A stretch of 64,000 bases of DNA, taken from positions 143,856-207,855 of the IMG/VR virus record IMGVR_UViG_3300042340_000379; one strand, 5' to 3'. The translations under genes and the position numbers were made by a program. Of the stretch, positions 32,409-64,000 are shown in pieces. Each line of letters begins with the position of its first letter. Within the stretch, counting starts at the first letter, position 1. The notes under the pieces were generated by a model that saw nothing but the letters and a program-made list of their open reading frames with translations, had not been told where the DNA came from and made no database searches.

Positions 32409-32552
32409 GGGCCATAAAAGGCCCGACGCGGGCCCTAATCGGACTTTCTAGGGCCCTAAAGGGCCCAACGCGGGACGTGAAGGGCCCTTCACGGGACATA
32501 GACGGCCCGACGCGGGCCCTAAAGAGACCAAAAAGGGCCCGTGAAGGGCCCT
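32409..32552 (-). repeat. GGGCCC/AAGTCC array with about 10.5-bp period, copy 1 (inverted relative to the others)
   Basis: GGGCC or GGGAC cores every 10-11 bp, upstream of parM. Confidence 0.85.
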
Positions 32553-33131: not shown

Positions 33132-33259
33132 TAAGTATTTATACTTACGATCACAAAGCTGGAGAAAATATGACGCGGATTTTAAGAGACTATCTTTAAC
33201 TAAGTATAAATACTTATGATCGCAAAGCTGGAGAAAATATGACGCGGATTTTAAGAGAC
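33132..33259. repeat. two 59-bp direct repeats (69-bp period), each starting with palindrome TAAGTAT-NN-ATACTTA
   Basis: 33132-33190 and 33201-33259 are nearly identical. Confidence 0.9.
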
Positions 33260-41127: not shown

Positions 41128-41133
41128 TCGCTA

Positions 41134-41286
41134 GGGCCCTATAGGGCCCGCAAAAGTCCGATTGGGGCCCAACGCGGGCCCTTTACGTCCCGTGAAAGTC
41201 CTTTTAGGGCCCGCGTTGGGCCTTTCATGTCCCGTCGAGGGCCCTAAACGTCCCGCAAAAGTCCGATTAGGGCCCGTCAAGGGCCC
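41134..41286 (+). repeat. GGGCCC/AAGTCC array, copy 2
   Basis: 10-11-bp spaced cores immediately after the RNAP stop. Confidence 0.85.
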
Positions 41287-41618
41287 AACCCCTATTTTGC
41301 TGCGCTCTACCCTGCGCGGTTAGAGGGGGAATGTTAGTTTTATTTGTTTGTTGTTAGCAGGTTTAGCTAATGGCAGTGGGTCTGTGTGTTATGCGGTTGG
41401 GCGGCAGGATGTAGATGCTAATAGGTATTTATGGCAGCACTATTATTTAATTGGAGCCTGGTCGCAGCGATCGCGCTGTGTATCTGGCTCGACAAATGAT
41501 TTGCCGACTGCCGTCCCCTGTGCGCGATGCGTTGGGACGGCAGCGGGAGAAAGAAACGCAAATTGCCGTGACTTAATGTCCGGCAGTTTGTAATCCGTTG
41601 AATTAGAGACTTGCTGCT

Positions 41619-45132: not shown

Positions 45133-45285
45133 GGGCCCTTGGCGGGCCCTAAACGGCCCGTGAAAGTCCTTTTAGGGCCCGCAAAAGTCCGATTAGGGCC
45201 CGCGTCGGGCCCTTCATGTCCCGTGACGGGCCCTAAACGGCCCGCGAAAGTCCTTTTAGGGCCCGCGTTGGGCCACTTAGGGCCC
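45133..45285 (+). repeat. GGGCCC/AAGTCC array, copy 3
   Basis: Same unit vocabulary as the other arrays. Confidence 0.85.
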
Positions 45286-47104: not shown

Positions 47105-47179
47105 GCTAAACTTAAATATCGACAGAATATGTAACCCCGGCCCTCAAAAGCTGGGGTTTTTTGTGGCTAAAATAGGGTC

Positions 47180-47353
47180 GGGCCCTAAACGGCCCGCGAA
47201 AGTCCTTTTAGGGCCCGCGAAAGTCCTTTTAGGGCCCGCGTTGGGCCACTTAGGGCCCGTCAAGGGACGTAAAGGGCCCGCGTTGGGCCGTTTAGGGCCC
47301 GTGAAAGTCCGTTCATGTCCCACGCTGGGCCCTAAACGGCCCGCCAAGGGCCC
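47180..47353 (+). repeat. GGGCCC/AAGTCC array, copy 4
   Basis: Same unit vocabulary as the other arrays. Confidence 0.85.
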
Positions 47354-49415: not shown

Positions 49416-49640
49416 GGGCCCGCGTCGGGCCCTAAAAGGCCCGTGAAAGTCCGATTAGGGCCCACGTCGGGCCCTAAAAGGCCCGTGAAAGTCCGATTAG
49501 GGCCCGCCAAGGGCCATGAAGGGCCCGCGTCGGGCCGTTTAGGGCCCGTGAAAGTCCTTTTAGGGCCCGAGGGGGTAAAGTTGGGCCCTTGGCGGGCCGT
49601 TTAGGGCCCGTGAAAGTCCTTTTAGGGCCCGCCAAGGGCC
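49416..49640 (+). repeat. GGGCCC/AAGTCC array, copy 5 (longest)
   Basis: Contains an internal 42-bp duplication. Confidence 0.85.
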
Positions 49641-50174
49641 ATAGCTATTTTGGCGATAAAATACAAAGAGTGAAGAAGAGAGAAAGTCTATGTCTGAATT
49701 AACAGGAAACACGTTCGGTAAAGCAGGTACGCGCTATAAGCTCTGCGTTAATCTGGCCAATAGATAGTGAAGCTGATAAATATAATCCAGAGGGCGATCG
49801 GTATGAGTACGTTAGGCTCGCCAAAGATTCAGAAGGGTGTTACGTCGCGGATTGCTTTATAGAAAACCAGGACGGGAAGCGGCATCCTGGTTACATACAA
49901 GAACCCATTCGTTTCTTAGCCGTGATGCAGCTTGAATTACAGATCTATCTATTCCACATGCGTAATGCTTATGGATTGAGCGTCACAGTCGTAGCAGCAG
50001 AAAGTTACGACGATGCGATCGCCATGGCGGCTACAGAAGAGGGATACTCTGTTGAAGAGTATTTGAGCTTCGGCGTAAAACACCAGATTCTAACTGCCAC
50101 TGAAAAAGCAGTGTTACTCTCCAAGTAAGGAATAAAAGCTATGACCTGTCTGGACGTAGCCTAGCTATTCCAGC

Positions 50175-50209
50175 GAATCCCCGCACCTTTAGGTCGGGGA
50201 GGATGTCAA
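50175..50209 (+). mobile_element. second, different IS200/IS605 right-end fragment
   Basis: GAATCCCCGCACCTTTAGGTCGGGGAGGATGTCAA. Confidence 0.65.
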
Positions 50210-50866
50210 GGGGTTGAACACCTTAAACGGTTCCCCCTGTGTTTTTATATAAATAAGAGAACTCGGGGACGAATTCAAACATCCGGTGCGGGAGCACCCT
50301 GGCAGAGATAGACAGGCCCTAGTTAAGGCACAGCAAGCTATCCGCATTTCCAGAACAAAGACGAATGCAAGATACGCGATCATTTTGACTGAGATTTACA
50401 TTGACCCCAAACACCATAGGCTCGCCTGTTTACAGGAGTCCTCCGCAAGAGGTATAGCCAGAGTAAGGAGTAGGGCAATCAGGAATCCAGCTCGCTACAT
50501 TATTTCCTTCGGCAAGAAATATGTGGGCCAGCCAGCCATCATCCAGCCGCCGATCGCGGCAGTCACCAAAAGGATCATTTGCGTTTGAATCAATCGGCTA
50601 AATAGGGTTAGTGGCATTTACGCCAGTTCATTGAGACCCTACTTCGGAATTTGTGGATACGATGGGATGGTTCCCGGCTCTAGCAGAAGAGGAGCTGACA
50701 GATGTGTGCAATCAATTTTATAATTATCTCTTCTTAAAATTTCTTCCTTTTCTTATTCTGTGTCTCTTGACACCCATGATAAAATTAAAGGTTAACCAAA
50801 CATCCACCTCATAGTCTGAAACCCTCATTCTCTCATTAAAATATTGATGTAAAGCTGCTCAAAGTA

Positions 50867-51391
50867 TTGGGTGGCTTTTATTTTGTATACTTTGAGTGGA
50901 AAATGTTCAGCAAAAGTATGGATTACAAAAAAGTAGAAGCACTGTGTGAAAAGGGTATGTTCGATGTAATGCGCGGACATCCCAATTGTATTGCAGTCTT
51001 GGTGACAATTTCGCCAGAAGTTGCAAGTATGGAATACAAGTTAAAAAAGAGCGCGGCCTGGGTGGTTGCGGCTTACAAGCTAGCTGAGAGAATACTTTAT
51101 TTTAGGCGGGATAAGTATATCCCGTTCCCTACGTTAACTCTCCATTTTTACTTCAACACCGCCGATTTAAATAAAGATACGAAGCTTGGGGCCTATCTTG
51201 TATCTCTAGCCAATAAGAACTCGCTTGTGCCCTATTCTGGCGTAAAAGCTTATGTTCCACCTATCTGGGGAAATACTACGCGAGGCTATGTCATCTTTAA
51301 GGAGTATTTCTCTAGTTTAGACACAAGGCGGCGCGAGGGTGAAGATAGGATTGGGGCGAGAGGGCTTACCCCCTTTTTGTTGAAAATTTAG
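50867..51391 (+). CDS. hypothetical protein
   Basis: 174-aa ORF. Confidence 0.5.
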   Translation: MGGFYFVYFEWKMFSKSMDYKKVEALCEKGMFDVMRGHPNCIAVLVTISPEVASMEYKLKKSAAWVVAAYKLAERILYFRRDKYIPFPTLTLHFYFNTADLNKDTKLGAYLVSLANKNSLVPYSGVKAYVPPIWGNTTRGYVIFKEYFSSLDTRRREGEDRIGARGLTPFLLKI

Positions 51392-51421
51392 AACTACAAC
51401 TACGTACAGGAGTTTAGATAG

Positions 51422-52571
51422 ATGATCGCTATAGAATTTGACTCGGCTCTTTTAGGAGAGACTGGTTCCAAAGAAAAAGATGGACAATACACGCGATTGT
51501 TCCGACAGAGACTTTTGATAGATCTTAAGGCACGCATAGACTTGGAGGTAGAACCGTCAGAAAGCAAGAACGTGCGCTGGCTGGTTCCGTTAGAAAATGC
51601 CCCTGCTTTTACCAGCACTCTTAATACGTATGCCTGGGACAATAATGCTACAAAATTTTAGACCAATGACTAAAGCTCAACAGCTAGTTGGAGAACTCGC
51701 CGCGAGACTTCCCACAGGCGCGAAGTTAGAAGTCTCGCGCCGAAATGACAAGCAGCTTGATATAACTCTGAGTTACACCGCTAACGGTTGCACCGGACAA
51801 TGCATAAGCCTTTGTGACGAAGATTACAACGGCCACGAACCCTGGCTGTGTGCTGTGATTATGCTAAACGGCTTAAAGGCCGATGTTAGAAACCAGTTCT
51901 TCAAAGCAATGTCTCTGCATGGAGTAAAAGTAGAACTTCCTGAGTGGGCGCGAAACAATGAATAGTTTAGAGATGAGCCCACTCGATCATGGCCGCAGGA
52001 TTGTCGAACTCTATGGCCATCGCATTGCTAAAGCCAAAAGCATTCCAGCTTGTGCGGAAGACTCTGAGGGGTATAGTGTGCGCTGGCTAACGCTTAGCGA
52101 AATTGTTAAAGACTACTGGCGCGGGAATGGATACGATCCAATGGAAAGAAACCCAATAGCACAGGGTTATATTCCCAGCAATCGGCTCTTCGATTTGACC
52201 AAACATATTCGAGATATTTAAGTGGAAAATGTTCAGCAAAAGTATTTATGGAGTATTAACCCATGATCAAAGAAATCCGCCTCACTCACACTCGACCGAC
52301 TAACAATCCTGATTCAGGTGAGCTACGGAAAGACTCAGCCATTGCTGTAGTTCGAGAAAATACATACGGTAGCTCTCTAGTCAAGTTCGATCGCTTATTT
52401 GAAACGCTACAGGAAACATTTCCTGGTGCTACACGAGATTCTGTTAATGTCGTTCATTATGGCGGCAACCGCATTAAAGGAACCTTCGGCTTAGAATGGA
52501 CAGTGTTTTATGACATCCATGAAGCGCCTAAAGGTTGGACTGCTATTAGTGAACTAGAGTGTACGCTTTGA
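51422..52571 (+). other. operon of small hypothetical genes (51422-51661, about 51666-51965, 51958-52221, 52263-52571)
   Basis: Tightly packed co-oriented ORFs with RBSs. Confidence 0.55.
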
Positions 52572-52742
52572 CGAGGAAACCATGGCCAATACTGACGATC
52601 TAATTTATTATCAAATGAGCTTACGTTTGCAATTAGAACTAGGTCTATCACTTATGAGATTTAAGTCGTAGCGCCTGACCTGAAAACTAGGCTCTGATTA
52701 ACCCGCCGAAACCGCTCAGTTACCCTGGGCGGTTTTTGCGTT

Positions 52743-52895
52743 GGGCCCTAAAAGGCCCGTCAAAGTCCTTTTAGGGCCCGCTGTGGGACGTTTAGGGCCC
52801 GTCAAAGTCCTTTTAGGGCCCAACGTGGGCCTTTTAGGGCCCGTCAAAGTCCTTTTACGTCCCGCCAAGGGCCGTTTAGGGCCCGCGTTGGGCCC
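52743..52895 (+). repeat. GGGCCC/AAGTCC array, copy 6
   Basis: Same unit vocabulary as the other arrays. Confidence 0.85.
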
Positions 52896-52938
52896 TACCT
52901 AGTTTTTTGGTAAAATAGAAAGATACCCATGGTCGAGA

Positions 52939-53796
52939 TTGATGAGCACCGCAAATTTTGAATGGTTTAGAAAAAACGACGAGCACGGTATAGCTGACAA
53001 GAGACGAGCGTTAGCCGCCGCCTCAGCTACAAAACAACAAATCTCAGAGATACCAGAGCCGCCAAGACCACAAGCCGCTGTTGTTAAACCTACATCAGAG
53101 AATCTTTGGGCTGTTTTAGAATTTGATGTGTTTGGTGCAACTCGTATCCACGGCTTTAAGAATGAAGGAGATGCGGCGACTGCATTACAAACACTGCCCA
53201 CAAAGTTTAGCGCCCAGACAACTAAGCTGCTAAGCATTGCCATCAACCCTCCACGGCAGGGGCAGGGTTTTCTAATCCCAATGCTTTCGCTAAAAGTGGC
53301 GATGGGGGATTATTTTGCTTTTTGCGCGGAACATCCACAAAGTTTGACTAAACTCCAGAGCGATCAGATCGCTCTTGTGGAGAATCTTGCGCGTCAGGCT
53401 GTCACTAAGTACCAAGCTGAAACAGCCCACATCACAGCCTATCTAGAGGACGTTTGTCAAACTGGCAGATTTTTTCAGCCACCAGGGAAAAATTATGTTA
53501 TTGATGCTCAAACTAAGAAAATCGTGATGGCGACAGGACTTGCTGCCGAGAACCCTGGGATTGAAGATATTGAGGCATTATGTTTGTATCCAGACCTTGC
53601 GGTTCTTTTAGCTCTTAAGTCTACCTACCCGCAGACTGTACAGATGGCTAGAGTACTTGCCGCACATTTGTTTGGAGATGTTCAAATCCCTGACACTGCC
53701 GGGGTTTGCATGCTGGAGCCGGGTGCTCCGTTTAAGCTATTGGCTTGGGGTGGACGGGAGTGTCTGATTACTCAAGCCGATTTAATTACCCTTTAA
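52939..53796 (+). CDS. hypothetical protein
   Basis: 285-aa ORF. Confidence 0.6.
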   Translation: MMSTANFEWFRKNDEHGIADKRRALAAASATKQQISEIPEPPRPQAAVVKPTSENLWAVLEFDVFGATRIHGFKNEGDAATALQTLPTKFSAQTTKLLSIAINPPRQGQGFLIPMLSLKVAMGDYFAFCAEHPQSLTKLQSDQIALVENLARQAVTKYQAETAHITAYLEDVCQTGRFFQPPGKNYVIDAQTKKIVMATGLAAENPGIEDIEALCLYPDLAVLLALKSTYPQTVQMARVLAAHLFGDVQIPDTAGVCMLEPGAPFKLLAWGGRECLITQADLITL

Positions 53797-53867
53797 ACTT
53801 GTTTTTTGACGAGGCAACCACTCACCCCTGAGCCTCGCAGGGGATGCCCAAAAGGAGGGCGAAGATT

Positions 53868-56800
53868 ATGCACCTTAAGCCTTTTATGTCTCCCGAAGAC
53901 AGCCCCAATATGTATTTTCTCGAACTACAGCAGCAGAATCATCCAGAGCTTTTGCCCGGAGAGTTATTCCTCTCCAACGTAAAAATGGAACGCGTCGCCG
54001 CGATTGAGGCTGGCGAGGACGAGTTCTACAGCCAGTACGAAGGCGTCCGTGTCGGGGCAATGGCCTACGACAGTCTGCGCAGACACAGACCCAACGAGCG
54101 CCCCGTCTTTCATCGGGGCTACAGAAAATCGCATACAACCAACTACTAAACCAAGAAGGGCGAAGACGATGATCGACACTATCATTCGAGTCGTGTGTAT
54201 AGCTGGCCTGGTCGGGATCGCAATCGCGGCCATCAAGTCAAAGCCCAGCGGTCAGCGCCGGATCAATAATGGGAGGCCGGGGCGACGTATTCGATAGCGC
54301 GATCGCCCACAACCTGACCATATAACCACACTACGGGATTCGCCCCGATAGAGCGATCGGAGAAGTGATGACAAAAGAGATAGAGCGACCCGCCTTTAGG
54401 GAGATCGCAAGTCGGCGCAAGGAGCAGCAGGAAGAGCGTTTAGAGGCCATGCGATCGGAGGCTAAAGCTGGCCATCCGCAATGGCTACAATTCCAAGAGG
54501 CTGTAGAAAGCATTAAAACTACTAGTGTCGCTAAAGTTGAATTAGATCTAGGCAATTATTACGGGACTCTAACCGTAAAGGTAGTGAGCGATCAGCACTA
54601 TGTTGGACTGGAGAACTGGAACGGCTGGTCTTGGCTACCCATCTCGAAGGCGCTATACGACCTATTGATCCAAGAGCTAGGTGGCAGCTAACCCATCAAT
54701 ATAAAAGACTGGTATCAATTGCATAATTTTCACTAGAGGAACAATCATGAAAACTTTGACCGTTAGAAGCGTCGACACAGATCTCAACCTGGTTGAAATT
54801 AACGACGGAGTTCTCGTCGGGTACGAGCATTTCTGTTCGATCGCAGACACTCTACCATATAAAGGAGACGTATACAAGTATGAAGGCTCTGCCCAAATGG
54901 GCGGGCAGCTAACGAAGGCCACCAAGATTCAATCATGATCAACACCACCATCCCAGCCATCTGCTTCTTCGCAGAGGCCTATCGCGACAACAACCGCATG
55001 ACCAAGGCCTACGTAGGCTATTGGGAGAAGTGGTTCTGGCATATTGGAGTTAGCGGGAAGGTGCCCCGCGACCCGACCAAGACGCCTGCCCATGCGATCG
55101 TCCACTACATCCCAGGTGGTCTTTACAAGGTGTTTCCTGGCACTCTAGGAGAAGACCCCACGGTATGTTTCAAGAAGGCCATGATCTATGCCTTAGGGCA
55201 GCATCGGCCATTCAAAAGCGACCCTTCGGTTTGCCACGATCGCTGGCAGAATGAGATATTACCCGCGATCGCGGAACTACAACAACAATTGGAGGCAGTC
55301 CATGTATAAACTTTACGCCCAGCAGTGGAACACATTCATTAAAGAAGGGACTCAGCAAGAGTGCTTGGATGAGGCGATCGCTCGAGGGTGGATAAATCCA
55401 ACGCCCGACACACGACCCGAAAATTGGTATTGTACCGACAGTTTTGCCAATGCCTATTGCAGCATCCGACTTGCTACCGAAGCTTGAATGACAATCACAA
55501 CAACAATTGGAGAATTCCCATGAGAGCCATCGACGACCCAGCCCGTTATGACACCCAGAACTGCCGGGTGTACCGAGTAAACATTGAAACGGGTGCTTAC
55601 GAACTGATCCAGACTGGATCAGTCAAAGCTATGGATCAACTGGTTCGAGACAACATTGGCGAGTACGAATACCCACTCACCATGTACTAGACCAACGATC
55701 GCGACGTGCCAGATGCTCAGAAAATTGCAGAATTTTGCGCGTACATCAAAGGTGGAAAATGAGCGATCGCACGAACCATGGCGAGCTAGAGGTAATGCAA
55801 CTCAAAAGGATGCAGCCATACCTCGAAGCCCACGGCATAACCAGTCCTAAGAAGATTGACAACTACTGGATGGGCCACTACCCAGACGGGACGAATCAAG
55901 TAATTCCCAGCAGGGTTTACGAGCCGCCGTTCCCTGGGTAGCCGATCCATCAACCACCCCGATCGCGCCCTTCCATCCTGCATAGCCCAGGCTCCCACCA
56001 GTCTGGGCCTGACCACGTCCACTACAAGCAAATGCCCAAGGAGGGCGAAGACGATGAAACTCTTTATGGCACCTGACGAAGTATTCCAAGAATGGCCTAA
56101 TATTTTTCAAGATGAAACGTTAATTGAAACGAGTGATGAAAAGTACCTCTGTGCTCAAGCGTTATCAGCGTGGGCTATGGTGTGTGGCCAGAGGGGAGAA
56201 GTACCGACAAATTTTGGAGATGTGCTAGCTAAAGTTGCGAATAGACTTGGTGTTTCGGGAACGCCTGATTCTTTCTCTGATTTTGCTAAAGAAAAAGGCT
56301 GGATTACTTGACATGCGAAACGCCCAAAAAATTACATACGACCAACTACTAACCAAATAAGGAAATCAACACTGATGTATAAAAACGCGATTGATAGCAA
56401 GAAAGTTGAACTAAAAGCCCAGAGGGAACTTGAGTTCCAAAAGAATGCGGAGAGCAAAAAGGATGCAATTCTAAAAGAGATCGAAGCGACTGTCCCAATT
56501 TTCTGGGACTGCTACCAGAAACATATCAAGGCTGGATTTTCTGCCTGGTGGAATGCTGAAGATGTTTTAGGAAGTGGGTATGGCGTTCCAGGCATTGTGA
56601 TGTGGGGGCATCTATTCATAGGTGCAGAGCGAGACTCTGACCGCTGGCGGCTTCGTATTGGATCTTGGAGCAATCAGCAGCAATATACTGGTTCCATGAC
56701 AAAAATCGAGTGCCAGCCAAAGGTTTCAATCGACGCTATGAATAGCCATCGAATGGCAATTGAGGAGAGATTTTCAGAGGGTGTCCAAGAAGCAATTTCT

Positions 56801-57713
56801 CTAATTACAGCTCCCGGCAACAAATCGAGCTTTGCGTCTTGGACTGGCCCGGATGAACTGTAATCCCAAGAATGCAATTAATACTCAATATAAAGACTGG
56901 TACATACTATGCGACAGTTGACTCCTGCTCAGAAGATGGGATTTCCACTTGGAATGTATTACGTGGTTAGTGGGGTAGAAAAAATCGAACTTTTTAGAGG
57001 CCCGTACGATTACCTCTCTATAGCCGTTGGGGTGGTTAACAGTTATACAGGCAAAGGGCTCTGGGTGATGAATAGCCAAGGGCACAAGTTGGACAAAAAT
57101 AAATACCAGAACTCCGAAGGCGAAGCATGGATTGCCAGTTAAACCAGCGCTTATGTCTAACTATCAGTTTGTAGAAACTGTCCATTCAATTGTTACAGCG
57201 GTCGCTTATCCAGTCTTTTGGGTTGTAGCCGTTACGTTCTTTTGGATCGCGCTGGGAGATGAAGACTACAAAATCCACTGGGTCTTGGCACTGATCTTGC
57301 TTAGTGTCGTTTTGTTTGAAGTAGGTCTATTGCATTAAAGGAAGGTTTTTTGAGGCAAGAACATCTAGACGAGATTGCTAAGTACCTGTCTTTTTTCCAG
57401 TAGGGTTTTAAGTGCCATAACCAAGAGCACTATCATTCGCCGGATAAAGTTTGATGAACACCTGATTTTGGGAGAGTCAAGAGTGAATATTTATCTGACA
57501 AACCAGACCGCCGCTGAAATCGTTCAGATCCTTCAGCACCATCAGTATGACGGCACCTTCCCCGATCAGCGGGTAGCAATTGAACTTTTTCTGAATGCCT
57601 ATGAACAGGCATTTCAGGAAAATGAGGCAAAAGTGACAGAGGAACACAATAGCTTTTTGCGGGCACGGATGGCATCGTTCAAGGCCAGCAAGATGGCAAA
57701 CCCCCATGACTAA
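53868..57713 (+). other. hyperplastic cluster of small accessory genes (e.g. 54365-54691, 54747-54938, 54935-55309, 56054-56311, 56375-56863, 56909-57142, 57132-57338)
   Basis: Short co-oriented ORFs, shared leader repeats, dense HIP1 sites. Confidence 0.6.
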
Positions 57714-57927
57714 CCCCACCCCCGACCAACTGATTAACTTATTTCAGCCCACTCCCTGGCAAGCCGGGAACCCGCCAGGGCCGGGGTGGTATTTGGTGAC
57801 GGTAGACATTAGCGGTAGCCGGGAAACCGAGTATGCCTACTGGCTACCCGGAGCCTGGGACGATGCGGAGAATGTTGTAGCCTGGCAACCCCTGCCGGAA
57901 CCGTACCAAGGTAAGGGAAAGGCTTGA
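57706..57927 (+). CDS. DUF551-like protein
   Basis: W...P...GWYLVT...VVAWQPLPEPY. Confidence 0.7.
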   Translation: MTNPTPDQLINLFQPTPWQAGNPPGPGWYLVTVDISGSRETEYAYWLPGAWDDAENVVAWQPLPEPYQGKGKA

Positions 57928-57929
57928 TA

Positions 57930-58071
57930 GGGCCCGCAAAAGTCCTTTTAGGGCCCGTCAAGGGCCTTTTACGTCCCGACGAGGGCCCTAAAGGGCCCGC
58001 AAAAGTCCTTTTAGGGCCCGTCAAGGGCCTTTTAGGGCCCGCAAAAGTCCTTTTAGGGCCCTAAAAGGGCC
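57930..58071 (+). repeat. GGGCCC/AAGTCC array, copy 7
   Basis: Alternating 11-bp and 10-bp units. Confidence 0.85.
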
Positions 58072-58086
58072 ATAGGAAAAATCAGT

Positions 58087-58350
58087 ATGGATATTGATAT
58101 AGAGCAACTTCTGCTTTTAGCGCAACTTGCGAGTCATAGCTGGCGATCCGTAACAGCTAAAATAGATATACAGCTTTTGCAAGCTGTATATGATAGAAAG
58201 ATCGTCTGCAGCAAGCCAGATGTTGTAGTTGATCGCATGCAAGCGTTAATGCTGGCTCGTGGCGTGCCGTTGCTTGGCACTCATGTGCATATAGAGCAAC
58301 AAGACGAATCTCACCTAGATTGGGATTCAATATTAGGTACCTGTCAATAA
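58087..58350 (+). CDS. hypothetical protein
   Basis: AGGA RBS; 87 aa. Confidence 0.5.
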   Translation: MDIDIEQLLLLAQLASHSWRSVTAKIDIQLLQAVYDRKIVCSKPDVVVDRMQALMLARGVPLLGTHVHIEQQDESHLDWDSILGTCQ

Positions 58351-58559
58351 AAGAATGGGTCTAGTTAATTTGCTAGAGCACCTAAGTTCAAGATTCTTTA
58401 GTGGAGCCATTGCTAACCTGCGGGACGCTCATGACAATGCGATCGCGACAGGTGAAGTGGATTTTTAGCGTCCGTACACTTTCCACGCGATCGCCATTGA
58501 CGATTCAATGTATTGGAGTGAAGATAGAGGAGCGCTGAGGTTAATGCCCTCTTAGGGCT

Positions 58560-58892
58560 TTGCAAGCACCACCGATGACGCGCCCTCAACCCCTCTTAGG
58601 GATGCCCGAAAGGGCTGTCGTTGAGCAGAGAATTGCCATGGAAAAGATGATTCACTTGGATGAGCCTCCATACATGGAGGCTCCCGAAGATCCTGATAGC
58701 AGCCCCATCTGGTCAACTTATAACGGGGTATTGATCGAATGCCACACCCGCTGCGTTGACCAGGCTCCGAGCGAAATGCGCGATCTTGGATACATAGAGG
58801 TCGCAAACCCTCACCCATTTGGGGAGCTATGGTGCAAAGAGTCCATGCTAGCTGAAGGATTGCCCTTGATTGAGCGAGAGGTCTTGGTATGA
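58560..58892 (+). CDS. hypothetical acidic protein
   Basis: Coupled (ATGA overlap) to the Cas11d-like gene. Confidence 0.5.
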   Translation: MQAPPMTRPQPLLGMPERAVVEQRIAMEKMIHLDEPPYMEAPEDPDSSPIWSTYNGVLIECHTRCVDQAPSEMRDLGYIEVANPHPFGELWCKESMLAEGLPLIEREVLV

Positions 58893-59722
58893 GTGATGCA
58901 TTAACCCAACTTCGCTACGGGTTCAGAGGGCTTGCCCAACTAGGGTCGTCGTTCGAGGAGTGCTTGGTAGCCGTGCTGCCAGCTCTCAATAGAATCGTGT
59001 CCGACGCCGAGAATTGGCAGTTAGTTTTTGACCTACTGCACTGGGACTGGGAGGGTCTGGGCAGGGCTCCCGTTCCTATTAAGTTGCAAGACCAGCTATT
59101 ACTGGCTCTGTCACCCTGGAAATCGGAGACCGCAGCCATTCTAAGGCGACTGGAAGCATCGGCTCAAGAGTGGGCTGATGCACTCAACGCCGCTGGCCTG
59201 AGTCCCTCTGAGGCTTTGGGGCTGGCAAAGGCTGACATAGAAATGACTGTTGAAAAGGAGTCAGCGCTGACTGCCGTGGCTACTCACAAGAGCGCGATCG
59301 CTCCCCCGCTAGAGATCGTGCGCCAGTATCGTCAGTTCTATCGAGCCAGCAAGATGTACTCGCCCGAGAGAACCAATGCGCTAAAGCCTCTGCTGTTAGC
59401 CAAGGAAGTCATCCAGCGCAGTTCCTCGACTGGTGAAGATCTAGCCGTAGAAGTCGCTGGCCGCATTGCCGCCCACCTGGCCCAGGTGCGTCGTGGCACG
59501 GCCAAGGGTCGATGGGTCATCTCCAGCCAGGATGCCGAGCGGCAGGCGATTTCTGAGTTTGCCAGATTCCTGGTTCATCATCTGCTAGGTGAGAGATTCC
59601 GGGGCGACAAGTCTCAGTTCAGTTCCAAGACTGGCATCGGACTGATTGAGGATGCCTGCTTTTTCCTGTACCTACTAGAGCAAGAGAAAGAAAACGATTC
59701 CAAGGAGGCTTCGCGTGGATAA
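58889..59722 (+). CDS. fusion of an unknown N-terminal domain to a Cas11d / Cas10d C-terminal (type I-D small subunit)-like domain
   Basis: YRQFYRASKMYSPERTNALKPL...TAKGRWVISSQDAERQAISEFARFLV...FRGD...LIEDACFFLYLLEQEKEN follows the cyanobacterial Cas10d C-terminal pattern as I recall it; internal ATG at 59243. Confidence 0.75.
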   Translation: MSDALTQLRYGFRGLAQLGSSFEECLVAVLPALNRIVSDAENWQLVFDLLHWDWEGLGRAPVPIKLQDQLLLALSPWKSETAAILRRLEASAQEWADALNAAGLSPSEALGLAKADIEMTVEKESALTAVATHKSAIAPPLEIVRQYRQFYRASKMYSPERTNALKPLLLAKEVIQRSSSTGEDLAVEVAGRIAAHLAQVRRGTAKGRWVISSQDAERQAISEFARFLVHHLLGERFRGDKSQFSSKTGIGLIEDACFFLYLLEQEKENDSKEASRG

Positions 59723-59972
59723 AGTTCTTGGCTTAGATGTTGTCAACAGGTTCAACCCTGGCGGGATAGAAGCCACTCTGAAGATGTGGCATGAAGACCC
59801 TGAGCAGGTTGGCCGATGGGTAGTGTTCGATGGAGTTCAGGTTTCGCTGAGAGATCGCCTGAACAACCTGCGAGAGGGGGAACGATCGATCTGCCTGGTC
59901 GAAGAATTAGCGTCAGTCGTCGGGGACAATGCACATCTAACCCTGGGGGAATTCCTATACAACGACTTCTAA
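59715..59972 (+). CDS. hypothetical protein
   Basis: AGGAGG RBS; overlaps the end of the Cas11d-like gene. Confidence 0.55.
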   Translation: MDKVLGLDVVNRFNPGGIEATLKMWHEDPEQVGRWVVFDGVQVSLRDRLNNLREGERSICLVEELASVVGDNAHLTLGEFLYNDF

Positions 59973-60259
59973 CTCTTCTTCCACCGCCTCCACCCTCTAG
60001 GAGTAATACTCTCATGGCGAGGGGTGGTTCTTCTTCCGGGACGCCTCTCGCCATCACTTAAGCGCTCTAGATTTCCCTTATGATTGATAGAGCGCTTTCC
60101 ATTTTTGTGGTGAACCACAGTCCCATCGTTAGGCTTAGCACCGGCTATCCGACGATAGGCCCGTCGCCCATCTTTCCATCGACCATTACCCGTGCCCAGG
60201 ATGGCTGCTAGGCGCTTCTTCTTGTGGGCAGGTGACTGTTCGTAGCCAGGTTGAGGCAT
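59969..60259 (-). CDS. small HNH endonuclease-like protein
   Basis: VVHHKNGKRSINHKGNLERL. Confidence 0.7.
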   Translation of the reverse strand: MPQPGYEQSPAHKKKRLAAILGTGNGRWKDGRRAYRRIAGAKPNDGTVVHHKNGKRSINHKGNLERLSDGERRPGRRTTPRHESITPRGWRRWKKS

Positions 60260-60305
60260 AGGAGGGGTGCAGAACGCTCAATGTATTTTAACCAACGGAG
60301 ACTTT

Positions 60306-60626
60306 ATGCCTGAACGAAGAGACGGCTTTTACCTCATCTATGAGTGCGATGGCCACTGCCACTATGATTCAATGGTCATCAAGGCTATCCTCACGAAAGA
60401 GAGCCAAGCAATCGCGCACTACACCCGGATCGAGTCGGCATATCCCGCCAATGGGGCTGGCTGGCGAGTGAAGATGGGATACCTGCCCAAAGACCATGAT
60501 ATGCAAGGCGATGGCGACATCTTGCGCCAGATGGAAGATGTTACACCCACTATTCTGTGTTCACGCGATGCGAAATGGCTTCCGTCCTCCAAGCATCAAA
60601 GAGAGTCCCGTAAGGAGAGGATTTAA
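60306..60626 (+). CDS. hypothetical protein
   Basis: GGAG RBS before ATG 60306. Confidence 0.5.
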   Translation: MPERRDGFYLIYECDGHCHYDSMVIKAILTKESQAIAHYTRIESAYPANGAGWRVKMGYLPKDHDMQGDGDILRQMEDVTPTILCSRDAKWLPSSKHQRESRKERI

Positions 60627-60630
60627 CGCC

Positions 60631-61287
60631 ATGGCCAACCCTATCGACACGTCTCCCATATCCATCGCCCACGTTGACCTGTCAAAAGGCTCTCTCGCTT
60701 TCAAGGACGCACTGACTTTCACGCCCACGATGGACAGGAACCTGATCTTAGTCCTGGATGCGGAGACGGGCATCTACGCTTTTGCTGAGACTAGAGACCA
60801 ACTCATAGAGGAGATCCATGAACAGCTTCGATTCATGTGGCTCGCCTATGCCATGGAAGATGACTACAAGCTCACTCAAAGCGCGATCGCATTTAACAAC
60901 AACAACAACGAGGAAGCTATAACTAAGATAAAAGCAAAAATTATGGAGTTTGATTGCGAGGCAGATCCTGGCGATCCGCATTCCACTAAAACTGAGGGTG
61001 CTGAATTGACGCCAGAGCGAGCCTACTACTACGGCGAGCTACGCGAGACTTTTAGCTGGACATACGAAACCACTTCCCGGTTTGTATTCTCATGTCCTGC
61101 CTCTGCCGATCCCGACAGCTTGATGGACAGATATGCCTATGATGAGCGAGGCGGTGGAGACGGTGCCGATGGCGACTACGAGTCGAGTTGCAGTCGAGTC
61201 GAGTCCTTGGGCGCTCAACCTATCCCAGAGGAACATTTCAACGTCATGAAACTCTACTTGCCTGACCTGACTATATCCGAGGATTAG
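60631..61287 (+). CDS. chimeric-looking hypothetical protein (HicB-like N-terminal half)
   Basis: GIYAFAETRDQLIEEIHEQL pattern; junction at a HIP1 site plus (AAC)5. Confidence 0.45.
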   Translation: MANPIDTSPISIAHVDLSKGSLAFKDALTFTPTMDRNLILVLDAETGIYAFAETRDQLIEEIHEQLRFMWLAYAMEDDYKLTQSAIAFNNNNNEEAITKIKAKIMEFDCEADPGDPHSTKTEGAELTPERAYYYGELRETFSWTYETTSRFVFSCPASADPDSLMDRYAYDERGGGDGADGDYESSCSRVESLGAQPIPEEHFNVMKLYLPDLTISED

Positions 61288-61661
61288 GTTCTATCCCCCA
61301 TTCATGTTTGAGGAACTGTTTATACATTGGCTCGTTCATGGGGCGATCCTCCGTTGGATTGCCGCCTATTCTAGACGATGGATGGCGATCGTCTTTGTTC
61401 GTTAATTACCTTTCTGAGAGGAAATACTCATGCCAAAGATCACAGCAACAGAGGACTAAGCTATGCCAAACGGCCCATATAAAGTTAATCAAGACGACAT
61501 CGATCGCAGCAGCACCCTTGACCAGTCGGATCTAAACCGCTGGTACGTCCTCGTCTCTGGCACCATGCAGTTCGTTCGATCGCAGGAGGACGGCAAGACC
61601 CTGGTGCAACAGCTCAGGGACGACCTGCGGGCAATCTCTTGACGCTCATGGGTACATCAAA

Positions 61662-61700
61662 ACAAATCAACCGCCGAGGATTCCTCGGCGGTTGATTTGT
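61662..61700. terminator. 19-bp perfect inverted repeat, bidirectional terminator
   Basis: ACAAATCAACCGCCGAGGA-T-TCCTCGGCGGTTGATTTGT. Confidence 0.85.
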
Positions 61701-61773
61701 ATAGTACAAATTTTAAGGGACGGCGGTGTTAAGGAGATTTCAATCCCTGGTAGGGATTAGTGTGAACTCACCG
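61701..61773 (-). CRISPR. solitary type I-D-like repeat (61737-61773) plus 36-nt spacer (61701-61736): crRNA-like unit
   Basis: Minus strand CGGTGAGTTCACACTAATCCCTACCAGGGATTGAAAT, with AATCCCT/AGGGATT stem and ATTGAAAN handle, then spacer, then terminator. Confidence 0.75.
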
Positions 61774-61794
61774 CTCAATCTGTACTAAAAGTAG

Positions 61795-61818
61795 AGGGGC
61801 GGCGGTGTTGGGGAGAAC
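61795..61818 (-). promoter_or_regulatory. protospacer-like site with GTT PAM matching the adjacent spacer
   Basis: GTT-CTCCCCAACACCGCCGCCCCT versus spacer CTCCTTAACACCGCCGTCCCT (18/21). Confidence 0.65.
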
Positions 61819-61877
61819 AACACCCTAGCCGCCGCCCTGCTGGTCTGCCATCTCGGCAGTGAGATCCAGCTATGGAT

Positions 61878-61905
61878 ATAGTAGCAGATTTAAGCTAAAT
61901 AGCAA
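61878..61905 (-). promoter_or_regulatory. sigma70-like promoter for the crRNA-like unit
   Basis: TTGCTA-16 nt-TACTAT with a TG extended -10. Confidence 0.55.
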
Positions 61906-62051
61906 GAAATTTACTTTGGATAGTTGGGCAGAATCAGCCTATTTTTGTGCTTACAATAGGTGCAAGGCAATAAAAAAGCTGCGTGGGAACACAGCTTTAA
62001 GAATTACTTGTTTGGGAATCGACAGTCTATCTATCCACTCACTATTTTAAC

Positions 62052-63821
62052 ATGAAACAGAAAGCTGCATCGCCCTCCAGCAGTCAAAGTATCCAAGATT
62101 TAGAACTGAATCAACCTTGCGTGCCCCAAAGTATCCAGGATGCGCTAGCTAAGCTACCGTTAGAAACTCGGCAAAGAATAGAGAAGAACGTAGACAAGCT
62201 TAACCGAGGAATAGATAACGAAATCCTTAGACAAATTATTCACAAAGCTAATCCACAACTGTCTCATGCTTATGGAGTGGCTCTTGTTCGCAGCATACTT
62301 TGGCGTATGGAGCGGGACGCCCATCTATCCAAGATTAAAGAACCTATTTATAGACGCAGCATCCCTGTAAGTATTCTATGGTCAGCATTAAGTGGGGAGC
62401 CCTCTCGCATTTATAACAGCAATGCTAGGGCTCAGAAGTTTATGGGGGCTATTACCAAAGAGATAATCGACCCTCTATGGAGAAGCCGACTTATAACGAC
62501 AGTTCCCCATAACCGTAAGCAGCATAGGTGCCGAATCTTTAACCTAAGGCACGTCGCAAAAACAATCCACAACAGAGAACAAAAACCCCATATGCACCCA
62601 TTTGACTACAACCGCGTTGAAGATTACCAACTACCCCCAGTGGGAGTGGGTCAAGAGAAACTGCCTTTGCTCTGGTCTAAAGACAAAGCAAAGTACATGG
62701 CTATCACAAATGAGACCGGGGAATACCTCAGAAACTGCAAGTTCAGATTTGAGAGCATTGCATGGGATCGCATTGGGCTCTATTGGGCTAAGCAGTATGC
62801 AGACATAACAGCTAAATCTAGGGTGGCCTGCGATGCAAAGATCGGCTCGATCAAAAACGCTATTGAGGGTCTTGAATGGAAAATGGATGTTCAGCATACC
62901 GGGCAGTATCACATCCAGGGCCCAGGCCGTATGCATACCATTGGTGGAAGCATCGCGCTGCCAAAAGCATTCAGGCGGCTCTTTATCAGCCCTGTTAACA
63001 AGAACAACCTAGTACTCGAACTTGACCTTAAAAGCGCTCAGCTCGTTATCCTGAGTAAGTTTTTGGGGTGTACTGAGATCGTAAGCGCACTCCAGGACTG
63101 CCATAGAACGGGTAAATCTATTTGGGGTCTTATACAGCCAGAAGGGGAGTGTGTACCTAAGCGAGCGCTGAAAGTCCTAACCTATGGCCTATGCTTTGGA
63201 GCCAAGCGAGAAGACCTTCTCTATCTATGTAATAAGGAACTCTGGAAGACAGAATGCCCATTCGAGTTCTCAAAAGAAAGCCTAGATAAAGTTTTGGATG
63301 GGTTTTTAGCTCCTTTAGTCATTGAACGAGACAAATGGATGGCACGGTACACAAGCAAAGAGCTCAAAAAGAGAGGCACTAAGCTAACACACAAAAATGC
63401 TCTTGGGCTCGTATTTCAGGCAGGTAAAGAGCTGAAAGAATACGAGGCAAAGTGCAAAAAGTACGGGAAAAAGCCCCTGGATACTAAGATTGCAGGCCGT
63501 TTGCTGGCGCATTATGCCCAAGGTGAGGAGCAATTCATTATGCAGAGCTTCATTGCTAGCAGCGTGATGAAAGAGAACATATTAGACTTTAGCTATGACG
63601 GCCTAAGCGTTGAAGTTCCTATGAATTATGCAGAGATAACAGAACGATACGACGCATGGTTACAGGAATTTGACCCTGACCATCACTTTGAGTACTGTCC
63701 CCTATGGTTCAAACAGAACCCTGACCTAGATGGGCCCGACATGCTAGGCAATATGCTTCAGGAAAATTGGGAGGAGAAGTATAACCAAAAACCAGAAAAC
63801 CTTAAATATTTTCCTGAATAG
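62052..63821 (+). CDS. family A-like DNA polymerase / replication protein lacking an evident exonuclease domain
   Basis: GRMHT, ELDLKSAQL (motif A), KRALKVLTYGLCFG (motif B), HYAQGEE and FSYDGLSV (motif C). Confidence 0.7.
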   Translation: MKQKAASPSSSQSIQDLELNQPCVPQSIQDALAKLPLETRQRIEKNVDKLNRGIDNEILRQIIHKANPQLSHAYGVALVRSILWRMERDAHLSKIKEPIYRRSIPVSILWSALSGEPSRIYNSNARAQKFMGAITKEIIDPLWRSRLITTVPHNRKQHRCRIFNLRHVAKTIHNREQKPHMHPFDYNRVEDYQLPPVGVGQEKLPLLWSKDKAKYMAITNETGEYLRNCKFRFESIAWDRIGLYWAKQYADITAKSRVACDAKIGSIKNAIEGLEWKMDVQHTGQYHIQGPGRMHTIGGSIALPKAFRRLFISPVNKNNLVLELDLKSAQLVILSKFLGCTEIVSALQDCHRTGKSIWGLIQPEGECVPKRALKVLTYGLCFGAKREDLLYLCNKELWKTECPFEFSKESLDKVLDGFLAPLVIERDKWMARYTSKELKKRGTKLTHKNALGLVFQAGKELKEYEAKCKKYGKKPLDTKIAGRLLAHYAQGEEQFIMQSFIASSVMKENILDFSYDGLSVEVPMNYAEITERYDAWLQEFDPDHHFEYCPLWFKQNPDLDGPDMLGNMLQENWEEKYNQKPENLKYFPE

Positions 63822-63879
63822 GATAAGAAAAACTTATATAGTACGAATATAGTACATAAAAAGTTTAATAAATAAGCTG

Positions 63880-63922
63880 AGCTTATGATCAATATAACTA
63901 AAACTTATATTGATCATAAGCT
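63880..63922. repeat. 18-bp perfect inverted repeat in an AT-rich region (candidate origin or cruciform)
   Basis: AGCTTATGATCAATATAA-CTAAAAC-TTATATTGATCATAAGCT. Confidence 0.8.
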
Positions 63923-64000
63923 TTTATTTTTTCTATTTTGAATTTCTAAAAAAAATATATTTTGTGGCCCAGGGGGGGGGGGAGCCATTCGGAGGTCGCT

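What the first reader, a model, noticed from the sequence alone, without database searches (positions are those of the whole stretch)
58889..59722. Stand-alone phage-encoded Cas11d-like domain fused to an unknown N-terminal domain
Seen: residues about 139-270 follow the Cas10d C-terminal pattern motif by motif (YRxFYRA, LKP, TAxGRWVIS, ERQAI, FAR, GD, LIxDxCxFLYxLEQxKEN). An in-frame ATG at 59243 could give a free small subunit. Known: Cas11d is made by internal translation within cas10d and is needed in several copies for stable target binding. Inference: a dominant-negative subunit mimic (anti-CRISPR), or an adaptor that brings a new roughly 118-aa effector onto Cascade.
Basis: partly seen in the sequence, partly recalled or inferred. 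Interest (0 to 1): 0.86.

Follow-up and report, generated by a model that had tools for sequence, protein, structure and literature searches.

The report
Cyanophage Cas11d mimic, probable anti-CRISPR
A freshwater jumbo cyanophage carries a 277-residue protein whose C-terminal half copies the small subunit (Cas11d) of the type I-D CRISPR complex and whose N-terminal half is an acidic domain of unknown fold; it is most likely an untested anti-CRISPR, and this locus is already listed in a published table of orphan viral cas genes.

Summary
ORF 58889-59722 (+, 277 aa) is intact. Residues ~128-277 are homologous to the extreme C-terminus of Cas10d/Csc3, which is the whole Cas11d small subunit (profile-profile E 2.7e-33; Foldseek top hit Cas11d 7SBA_J). 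Residues 1-131 are a confidently modelled, strongly acidic six-helix domain with no detectable relatives. The window is the end of a 208-kb Lake Mendota viral contig, distantly related to Ma-LMM01-type cyanophages, and holds no other I-D cas gene.

The two-domain protein defines a conserved family under purifying selection. Its members sit in unrelated mobile-element contexts, never beside cas genes, and form their own clade outside true Cas10d.

The best explanation is a type I-D anti-CRISPR acting by small-subunit mimicry, as AcrIB4 does for type I-B. This is inferred, not tested.

The novelty is limited. Katz et al. (Table S3) already list this exact locus as an orphan viral 'cas10d'. New here are the Cas11d identity, the fused acidic domain, the family, and sister architectures (solo and C-terminally fused).

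The parts
58889..59722 (+). Whole gene: 277-aa two-domain protein (acidic N-domain plus Cas11d-like C-domain)
   Evidence: ORF. There are 25 full-length homologs of 268-291 aa. dN/dS is 0.27 against the 97%-identical copy; against the 78%-identical copy dN is 0.18 with dS saturated. Independent contigs are identical over the ORF.
58889..59281 (+). N-terminal domain (residues 1-131): six helices, strongly acidic, no detectable relatives outside the family
   Evidence: AlphaFold2 pLDDT 93.2 with six helices. Net charge is median -11 and pI 4.5 across the family. Nothing was found in Pfam or PHROGs, PDB sequences, Foldseek PDB, the ESM Atlas, against the C-domain or against full Cas10d. It also exists as a free 126-127 aa protein.
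59270..59719 (+). Cas11d-like domain (residues ~128-277), equivalent to the complete type I-D small subunit and the C-terminal domain of Cas10d
   Evidence: tblastn with a genuine Cas10d hits 59231-59716 only.
59243..59245 (+).
   Evidence: No Shine-Dalgarno-like motif in the 20 nt upstream. The position is Met in 11 of 26 members and Phe in 10. L001 and L004 have no start codon at all in this stretch.
59276..59278 (+). In-frame GTG (Val130) with AGGAG 15 nt upstream; the only other candidate internal start, weak
   Evidence: The spacing is long, and the motif is absent from the 78%-identical homolog L019.
58399..60340 (+). About 2-kb cassette (upstream small ORF, the gene, downstream small ORF) shared at 93% nucleotide identity with an otherwise unrelated element (L016)
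   Evidence: blastn of window 50001-64000 against L016. Apart from short, weaker matches at 60286-60633 (84-98% identity), the flanks do not align.
58560..58892 (+). Upstream 110-aa ORF whose stop overlaps the gene's start (ATGA); function unknown
   Evidence: No Pfam or PHROGs hit.
59715..59972 (+). Downstream 85-aa ORF whose GTG start overlaps the end of the gene; function unknown
   Evidence: No significant family hit.

Best explanation

Proposed mechanism, step by step:
1. The C-terminal domain is a diverged copy of Cas11d, the small subunit. Two copies of Cas11d, together with the Cas10d C-terminus, form the minor filament of I-D Cascade.
2. Cas11d is required for binding double-stranded DNA targets and can join the complex when supplied in trans.
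3. The phage protein is proposed to take a Cas11d position, or to cap the Cas10d C-terminal or Cas11d interface, during or after Cascade assembly.
4. Its acidic N-terminal domain then sits where the displaced DNA strand or the Cas11d filament should be. R-loop formation and target binding fail. This is subunit poisoning.

Shown here: the homology and fold of the C-domain; the orphan position in a phage; the conserved two-domain family under purifying selection; its separate clade; its mobility as a small cassette.

Inferred: binding to Cascade, inhibition of interference, and the role of the N-domain.
For: 1. The C-domain matches all of Cas11d by sequence and structure.
2. There is no other I-D cas gene in the 64-kb window or in nine related loci, and no Rfam family, CRISPR repeat families included, reaches threshold.
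3. The carrier is a virus. It has a portal and a capsid protein, it is an IMG/VR contig of 208 kb, and its capsid and portal resemble only Microcystis and Microcoleus phages.
4. The closest Cas10d sequences are cyanobacterial, and type I-D is common in cyanobacteria (PMC10212523).
5. The family comprises 25 full-length clusters at 90% identity plus further 50%-identity representatives. They lie among small unknown genes of mobile elements, beside ArdA, DUF932, integrase and HNH genes, with no conserved neighbour.
6. On a tree of the Cas11d domain the family is one clade (SH-aLRT 97), apart from the Cas10d clade (97). This is the same pattern reported for AcrIB3 and AcrIB4.
7. Both domains are under purifying selection.
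8. Cas11d is needed for dsDNA binding and assembles in trans (bioRxiv 10.1101/2020.04.18.045682).
9. AcrIB4, a homolog of the Cas8b C-terminus (the Cas11b region), blocks type I-B upstream of DNA binding (bioRxiv 10.1101/2023.06.24.545427). Replacement of Cas11 has been proposed as its mechanism (bioRxiv 10.1101/2025.06.06.658234).
10. The N-domain is strongly acidic (median net charge -11), as are many DNA-mimicking anti-CRISPRs, including AcrID1 (PMC10212523).
Against: - There is no functional, binding or expression evidence. No RNA run could be listed.
- The host is inferred, not known, and whether it has a type I-D system is unknown.
- No known anti-CRISPR or Aca gene was recognised beside it.
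- The Cas11d-like domain keeps a basic charge (+4), so it has not visibly lost a DNA-binding surface.
- The N-domain also exists alone in other elements, so it may have a target of its own unrelated to Cascade.
- In the Listeria work, over-expressing the genuine Cas5 or Cas8b proteins did not inhibit immunity. Resemblance alone therefore does not make an inhibitor.
Confidence: 0.55

Rival explanations
1. It is a fusion of two independent accessory or anti-defence modules, as in the natural fusion AcrIE4-F7. The Cas11d-like half acts on type I-D Cascade. The acidic N-domain acts on a different host target, such as another defence system or a DNA-binding protein, rather than serving as a steric block on Cascade.
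For: The N-domain occurs as a free 126-127 aa protein with no Cas11d-like domain in the locus (P0042, P0043). Cas11d-like domains also occur alone (L021 ORF 4766-5194, P0045, P0047) and fused to a different C-terminal domain (P0038 group). AcrIE4-F7 is a published fused anti-CRISPR (PMC8887544, abstract).
Against: The N+C architecture is stable across the 25 full-length clusters down to about 45% identity. This suggests the two halves work together. No target of the N-domain is known.
Confidence: 0.15
2. It is an adaptor or hijacker rather than an inhibitor. The protein joins host I-D Cascade as a working small subunit and uses the N-domain to recruit or redirect the complex for the phage's benefit, for example against competing elements.
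For: The Cas11d-like domain is well conserved (63% mean column identity) and keeps a basic charge. This is compatible with a working small subunit.
Against: The phage window has no CRISPR array or guide and no other cas gene. The N-domain has no enzyme-like conserved residues and no relatives. No precedent is known to me.
Confidence: 0.08
3. The Cas11d-like helical bundle has been reused for a job unrelated to CRISPR, for example nucleic-acid binding in phage replication or regulation. The similarity to Cas10d reflects only common descent.
For: There is no functional evidence at all. All neighbouring genes are unknown. The family sits outside the Cas10d clade.
Against: About 35% identity to cyanobacterial Cas10d is retained over the full domain, including the most conserved Cas10d motifs. 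The family is confined to cyanobacteria-linked sequences, where type I-D is common.
Confidence: 0.15
4. It is a decaying remnant of a captured cas10d gene, with no function.
For: Only the last ~150 residues of a ~1100-residue protein are present.
Against: The ORF is intact in all members. dN/dS is 0.27, and dN is 0.18 with dS saturated. The family is conserved across unrelated genomic backgrounds. The domain boundary coincides with the natural Cas11d start.
Confidence: 0.02

Closest known systems
AcrIB4 (Listeria; Katz et al., 'Diverse viral cas genes antagonize CRISPR immunity', bioRxiv 10.1101/2023.06.24.545427)
   Same: A mobile-element protein homologous only to the C-terminal part of the Cascade large subunit, the region that is also made as the Cas11 small subunit by internal translation. 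It is encoded outside cas loci and forms its own clade apart from the true Cas proteins. AcrIB4 inhibits upstream of DNA binding, and Cas11 replacement has been proposed as its mechanism (bioRxiv 10.1101/2025.06.06.658234).
   Different: AcrIB4 targets type I-B in Firmicutes, while this protein derives from type I-D (Cas10d) and is linked to cyanobacteria. This protein carries an extra ~130-residue acidic N-terminal domain. Its activity is untested. Sequence similarity to AcrIB4 was not tested because no sequence was at hand.
Cas11d, the type I-D small subunit and C-terminal domain of Cas10d/Csc3 (PDB 7SBA chain J; TIGR03174)
   Same: Same fold and clear sequence homology over the entire subunit.
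   Different: It is not encoded inside cas10d, not in a cas operon, and not made from a conserved internal start. It is fused to a foreign domain. It lies outside the Cas10d clade at ~35-40% identity, whereas cyanobacterial Cas11d regions are 70-85% identical to the P0040 query.
Orphan viral cas genes catalogue (Table S3 of the same Katz et al. paper)
   Same: This exact locus is listed there: IMGVR_UViG_3300042340_000379, query cas10d, CAS-I-D, 38.3% identity, contig 203125-203562, E 3.7e-20. That span equals residues ~128-273 of this ORF. It is one of six 'cas10d' entries, with predicted hosts among cyanobacteria.
   Different: It is only a table row. The paper's text never mentions I-D, Cas10 or Cas11. 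It does not note that the hit equals the small subunit, that it is fused to another domain, or that it forms a family.
AcrID1 (Sulfolobus virus SIRV3), the only described type I-D anti-CRISPR
   Same: Presumed target system (type I-D). Acidic character of the inhibitor, or of part of it.
   Different: AcrID1 is a 13-kDa archaeal-virus dimer that binds Cas10d and is not a Cas homolog (PMC10212523, PMC7689449). No PDB chain other than Cas11d and Cas10d was matched by this protein.

Membership tests
Cas11d / Cas10d C-terminal domain (type I-D small subunit) | Sequence homology to the C-terminal ~145 residues of Cas10d/Csc3 | tested here: met
   PADLOC E 6.1e-24; TIGR03174 E 8.7e-16; hhalign E 2.7e-33. 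The TIGR03174 score of 57.2 bits is below the 60-bit whole-protein cut-off because only the last domain is present.
Cas11d / Cas10d C-terminal domain (type I-D small subunit) | Helical-bundle fold of Cas11d | tested here: met
   The Foldseek top hit is 7sba_J (Cas11d): E 9.5e-5, probability 1.00, TM 0.73 on the target, 141 columns.
Cas11d / Cas10d C-terminal domain (type I-D small subunit) | Encoded within cas10d and produced from a conserved internal translation start | tested here: not met
   No cas10d body lies upstream. There is no conserved start codon before the domain.
Cas11d / Cas10d C-terminal domain (type I-D small subunit) | Located in a type I-D cas operon (cas7d, cas5d, cas6, cas3') with a CRISPR array | tested here: not met
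   tblastn with Cas10d, Cas7d, Cas5d, Cas6 and Cas4 of a genuine locus (L006) finds only the Cas11d-like stretch, both in the window and in nine related loci. Cas3' was not among the queries. No Rfam CRISPR repeat family and no CRISPR-like repeats were found.
Cas11d / Cas10d C-terminal domain (type I-D small subunit) | Groups with Cas10d sequences in a phylogeny | tested here: not met
   It forms a separate clade of 33 fused members plus 2 solos (SH-aLRT 97), against a Cas10d clade (97). This was a quick search on 144 columns, and the tree is unrooted.
Cas11d / Cas10d C-terminal domain (type I-D small subunit) | Assembles into the Cascade minor filament and supports dsDNA binding | not testable with these tools
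   Needs co-purification, gel-shift assays or a complex model.
Cas-derived anti-CRISPRs (AcrIB3 / AcrIB4 type) | Homolog of a Cascade subunit encoded on a phage or mobile element outside any cas locus | tested here: met
Cas-derived anti-CRISPRs (AcrIB3 / AcrIB4 type) | Forms its own clade, diverged from the cognate Cas protein | tested here: met
Cas-derived anti-CRISPRs (AcrIB3 / AcrIB4 type) | Inhibits interference by the cognate CRISPR-Cas system | not testable with these tools
   Needs an interference assay in a type I-D strain.
Cas-derived anti-CRISPRs (AcrIB3 / AcrIB4 type) | Sequence similarity to AcrIB4 itself | not tested
   No AcrIB4 sequence was available from a tool. None is expected, because AcrIB4 derives from Cas8b and this protein from Cas10d.
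AcrID1 family | Sequence or fold similarity to AcrID1 | tested here: not met
   PDB sequence and Foldseek searches return only Cas11d and Cas10d as significant matches.

The most novel reading that the evidence does not exclude
The Cas11d-like bundle is a general 'Cascade-docking' module that mobile elements of cyanobacteria have recruited several times. It appears alone, with the acidic N-domain described here, and with a different ~120-residue C-terminal domain. The acidic N-domain would be a new-fold DNA mimic or blocker that the module places inside type I-D Cascade. This would be a modular Trojan-horse class of anti-CRISPRs and the first bacterial inhibitors of type I-D.
Probability: 0.3. 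Interest if true: 0.75.

Novelty: new member of a known kind. Interest (0 to 1): 0.5.

Why it matters
Only one type I-D anti-CRISPR is described, AcrID1 from an archaeal virus, and none from bacteria. Type I-D is a main CRISPR type of cyanobacteria, including bloom-forming Microcystis, and is being developed for genome editing. A cyanophage inhibitor would bear on phage-host dynamics in lakes and would give an off-switch for type I-D tools.

It would be a second, independent case of small-subunit mimicry after AcrIB4. Its added domain could show how such mimics disable the complex. The gene is small and self-contained, so the test is easy.

Tried and rejected
- **Internal start giving a free small subunit: not supported.** Met119 is not conserved and has no Shine-Dalgarno motif. 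Two homologs have no possible start codon in that stretch.
- **N-domain as a second, diverged Cas11d copy: rejected.** hhalign of the N-domain against the C-domain finds only an 11-column overlap artefact.
- **N-domain derived from the part of Cas10d just upstream of Cas11d: rejected.** hhalign probability is 0.1%.
- **Identifying the N-domain led nowhere.** Tried Pfam, PHROGs, NCBIfam, PADLOC, PDB sequence profile, Foldseek PDB and the ESM Atlas on the N-domain, and Foldseek BFVD on the whole-protein model.
- **Related phages in GenBank (INPHARED): none.** No match by DNA or by protein for this gene.
- **Conserved neighbour or Aca-like regulator: none** across seven loci. Neighbours have no family hits.
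- **CRISPR array or solitary repeat in the window: none.** The only repeats are 21-nt tandem arrays without spacers.
- **Expression evidence: none.** No RNA run could be listed.
A narrower alignment found one further viral solo gene.
- **Some short hits are not counted as mobile-element forms.** P0039 (and P0056, on a long branch) sit inside the Cas10d clade. P0041, P0046 and P0054 carry Cas10d-like sequence upstream of the domain. These are probably fragments or split cas10d genes.

Full report
**1.

The ORF at 58889-59722 (+ strand, 277 aa) exists. Contigs from two lake-water runs cover it without a single difference. One of those runs may be the sample the window was assembled from.

Residues ~132-273 match the extreme C-terminus of Cas10d/Csc3 models:
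- PADLOC Cas10_Id: E 6.1e-24, profile positions 898-1039 of 1048.
- TIGR03174: E 8.7e-16, positions 817-944 of 946.

Pfam and PHROGs find nothing.

A profile of the family against an alignment of 12 cyanobacterial Cas10d proteins gives probability 99.9% and E 2.7e-33. Residues 128-277 match Cas10d 1003-1157 of 1163. Against PDB sequences, the C-domain profile matches Synechocystis Cas11d (7sba_J) over residues 5-143 of 146 at E 7.4e-7. The phage domain therefore equals the whole small subunit and begins where Cas11d begins.

The AlphaFold2 model built on the family alignment is confident (pLDDT 91.4, all-helical). Its best Foldseek hit in the PDB is Cas11d 7sba_J (E 9.5e-5, probability 1.00, TM 0.73 on the target), followed by the Cas10d chains of 7SBB and 7SBA.

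**2. The N-terminal half**

Residues 1-131 fold into six helices with high confidence (pLDDT 93.2). I found no relatives for this domain:
- PDB sequences, Foldseek PDB and the ESM Atlas give nothing.
- A BFVD search with the whole-protein model gives nothing.
- It is not a second Cas11d copy.
- It is not derived from any part of Cas10d.

The domain is strongly acidic: median net charge -11 and pI 4.5 across the family. The Cas11d-like half is basic: +4, compared with +1 for the same region of Cas10d. Its conserved positions are mostly hydrophobic or structural (F12, N42, Q44, F47, D48, W54, D68, W95, L99, G103, P106). Nothing suggests an enzyme.

**3. The carrier**

- The window encodes a Mu-like portal, an E-type major capsid protein and an Alp7A-like actin.
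- It is the last 64 kb of IMGVR_UViG_3300042340_000379, a 207,855-bp viral contig.
- The capsid and portal resemble (27-32% identity) the Ma-LMM01 group of Microcystis phages and a Microcoleus phage. For the capsid protein these are the only matches. The portal also has weaker, partial matches (about half its length, E about 1e-7) in mainly Bacillus phages.
- The DNA occurs in several lake-water metagenomes.
- tblastn with all proteins of a genuine type I-D operon (L006: Cas10d, Cas7d, Cas5d, Cas6, Cas4) finds only Cas10d residues 995-1153, at 59231-59716.
- No Rfam family reaches threshold, and there is no CRISPR-like array.

This is a jumbo freshwater cyanophage carrying an orphan Cas11d-like gene.

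**4. The family**

The large protein collection holds 25 full-length homologs of 268-291 aa, down to 44% identity. Both domains are conserved, with mean column identity of 37% for the N-domain and 63% for the C-domain. One homolog lies in a Chroococcidiopsis genome bin, the only one among 185,579 species genomes.

Members sit in long same-strand runs of small unknown genes in phage-like or mobile contigs. Neighbours include ArdA, DUF932, DUF7168, PAPS reductase, HNH and integrase genes, and never cas genes. Seven loci share no neighbour.

Against a 97%-identical copy in a different element, only about 2 kb around the gene (58399-60340) aligns at 93% nucleotide identity. The rest of the flanks do not align, apart from short, weaker matches at 60286-60633. 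The gene therefore travels as a small cassette.

dN/dS is 0.27 overall (N-domain 0.32, C-domain 0.16). Against a 78%-identical copy, synonymous sites are saturated while dN is 0.18. Both halves are under purifying selection.

**5. Relation to real Cas10d**

An exhaustive HMMER search of 1.84 billion representatives gave 64 hits. They comprise:
- the fused family;
- full-length Cas10d proteins (best is P0040, 37% identity, inside a genuine type I-D operon);
- free-standing 143-160 aa Cas11d-like proteins;
- a second fusion type, with the Cas11d-like domain first and an unrelated ~120-residue C-terminal domain (P0038, P0050, P0052, P0057, P0058).

Cyanobacterial Cas10d proteins are 70-85% identical in this region to the P0040 query.

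On a tree of the domain (93 sequences, 144 columns, quick search, unrooted):
- The fused family is one clade (SH-aLRT 97; 33 fused members plus 2 solos).
- The Cas10d sequences form another clade (97).
- Four of the five members of the second fusion type, and several solo groups, also lie outside the Cas10d clade.

One solo gene (142 aa) lies in a 93-kb viral contig from soil crust (L021, 4766-5194). The N-domain also exists alone as 126-127 aa proteins, one beside an integrase, with no Cas11d-like domain in the locus.

**6. The internal start**

The ATG at 59243 (Met119) is real but has no Shine-Dalgarno-like motif. The position is Met in 11 of 26 members and Phe in 10. Two homologs have no ATG, GTG or TTG in the 32 codons before the domain. 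A GTG at 59276 has AGGAG 15 nt upstream, but this is not conserved. A free small subunit made by internal translation is therefore not a family trait. It remains untested for this phage.

**7. Mechanism**

Published work establishes the following about type I-D Cascade:
- Its composition is Cas10d1:Cas7d7:Cas5d1:Cas11d2, with the Cas10d C-terminus and two Cas11d subunits forming the minor filament (PMC9123187).
- Cascade lacking Cas11d does not bind target dsDNA, and Cas11d supplied in trans restores both assembly and binding (bioRxiv 10.1101/2020.04.18.045682).

From this I infer that the phage protein docks through its Cas11d-like half into, or onto, the minor filament. The acidic N-domain would then block the filament or the path of the displaced strand, so that R-loops cannot form.

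The closest tested precedent is AcrIB4. It is homologous to the last 90 residues of Cas8b and blocks type I-B before DNA binding (bioRxiv 10.1101/2023.06.24.545427). Replacement of Cas11 has been proposed as its mechanism (bioRxiv 10.1101/2025.06.06.658234).

I put this explanation at about 0.55. The rivals are:
- a fusion of two independent anti-defence modules (0.15);
- a use unrelated to CRISPR (0.15);
- an adaptor that hijacks Cascade (0.08);
- a dead remnant (0.02).

**8. Prior knowledge and novelty**

[quoted passage not shown] Given the contig range of L010, that span corresponds to residues ~128-273 of this ORF.

Six such 'cas10d' rows are listed, with predicted hosts among cyanobacteria where a host is given. 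The paper's text does not mention I-D, Cas10 or Cas11. I found no paper naming a second type I-D anti-CRISPR, and a 2023 review states that AcrID1 is the only one (PMC10212523).

The kind of thing (a viral cas-derived anti-CRISPR candidate) and the locus itself are therefore already on record. New here are:
- its identification as the complete small subunit;
- the conserved fusion to an acidic domain of unknown fold;
- the extent, selection and phylogeny of the family;
- the sister architectures.

I file it as a new member of a known kind, with moderate interest.

Noticed in passing
window 32422-32550, 41126-41296, 45136-45285, 47172-47342, 49419-49651, 52735-52885, 57891-58068: Dispersed arrays of a 21-nt tandem unit (about TAGGGCCCGCAAAAGTCCTTT, containing GGGCCC) sit in the gaps between + strand gene blocks, 36 copies in all. 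They have no spacers, so they are not CRISPR arrays. Short-read assemblies break at them. The strict pattern is found in none of the other fetched elements, only in L010, which is part of this same contig. They may be regulator-binding or transcription-punctuation sites of this phage. The 46-aa 'ORF' at 57924-58064 is made of the repeat.
   Followed up: partly
window 12917-22999 (+) and 35638-41127 (+): Two giant ORFs of 3360 and 1829 aa have no Pfam match at all.
   Followed up: partly
window 31293-32372 (-): An Alp7A-like actin (ALP_N plus Alp7A_like_C, both weak) hints at plasmid-like segregation or a cytoskeletal function in this jumbo phage.
   Followed up: no
L014 3970-4770 (P0038); also P0050, P0052, P0057, P0058: A second fusion family has the Cas11d-like domain at the N-terminus followed by an unrelated ~120-residue domain ending in a conserved 'LHIGxKVSxxIPxEFAxxLQ' stretch. 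P0038 lies next to an IS605 OrfB/TnpB gene, outside any cas locus.
   Followed up: partly
L021 4766-5194; L015 507-968 (P0047): Free-standing 142-153 aa Cas11d-like genes lie in a 93-kb viral contig and in a short contig of small unknown genes. P0047's group and P0045, the protein most similar to the L021 ORF, fall outside the Cas10d clade. They are closer analogues of AcrIB4 than the fused protein.
   Followed up: partly
L023 3001-3384 (P0043), L022 3-383 (P0042): The acidic N-domain occurs alone as a 126-127 aa protein. In L023 it lies directly after a tyrosine integrase gene in a 102-kb contig.
   Followed up: partly
P0037 (233 aa): This protein fragment has two Cas11d-like domains in tandem and falls within the cyanobacterial Cas10d clade. 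It may be a duplicated small-subunit region of a cas10d gene.
   Followed up: no
window 61662-61700: A perfect 18-bp-stem palindrome lies between gene blocks; it is followed by a T run on the - strand (the + strand was not checked). Likely a terminator, perhaps two-way.
   Followed up: no
window 33132-33190 and 33201-33259: A 59-nt direct repeat is present in two copies (93% identical), 69 nt apart, in an intergenic region.
   Followed up: no
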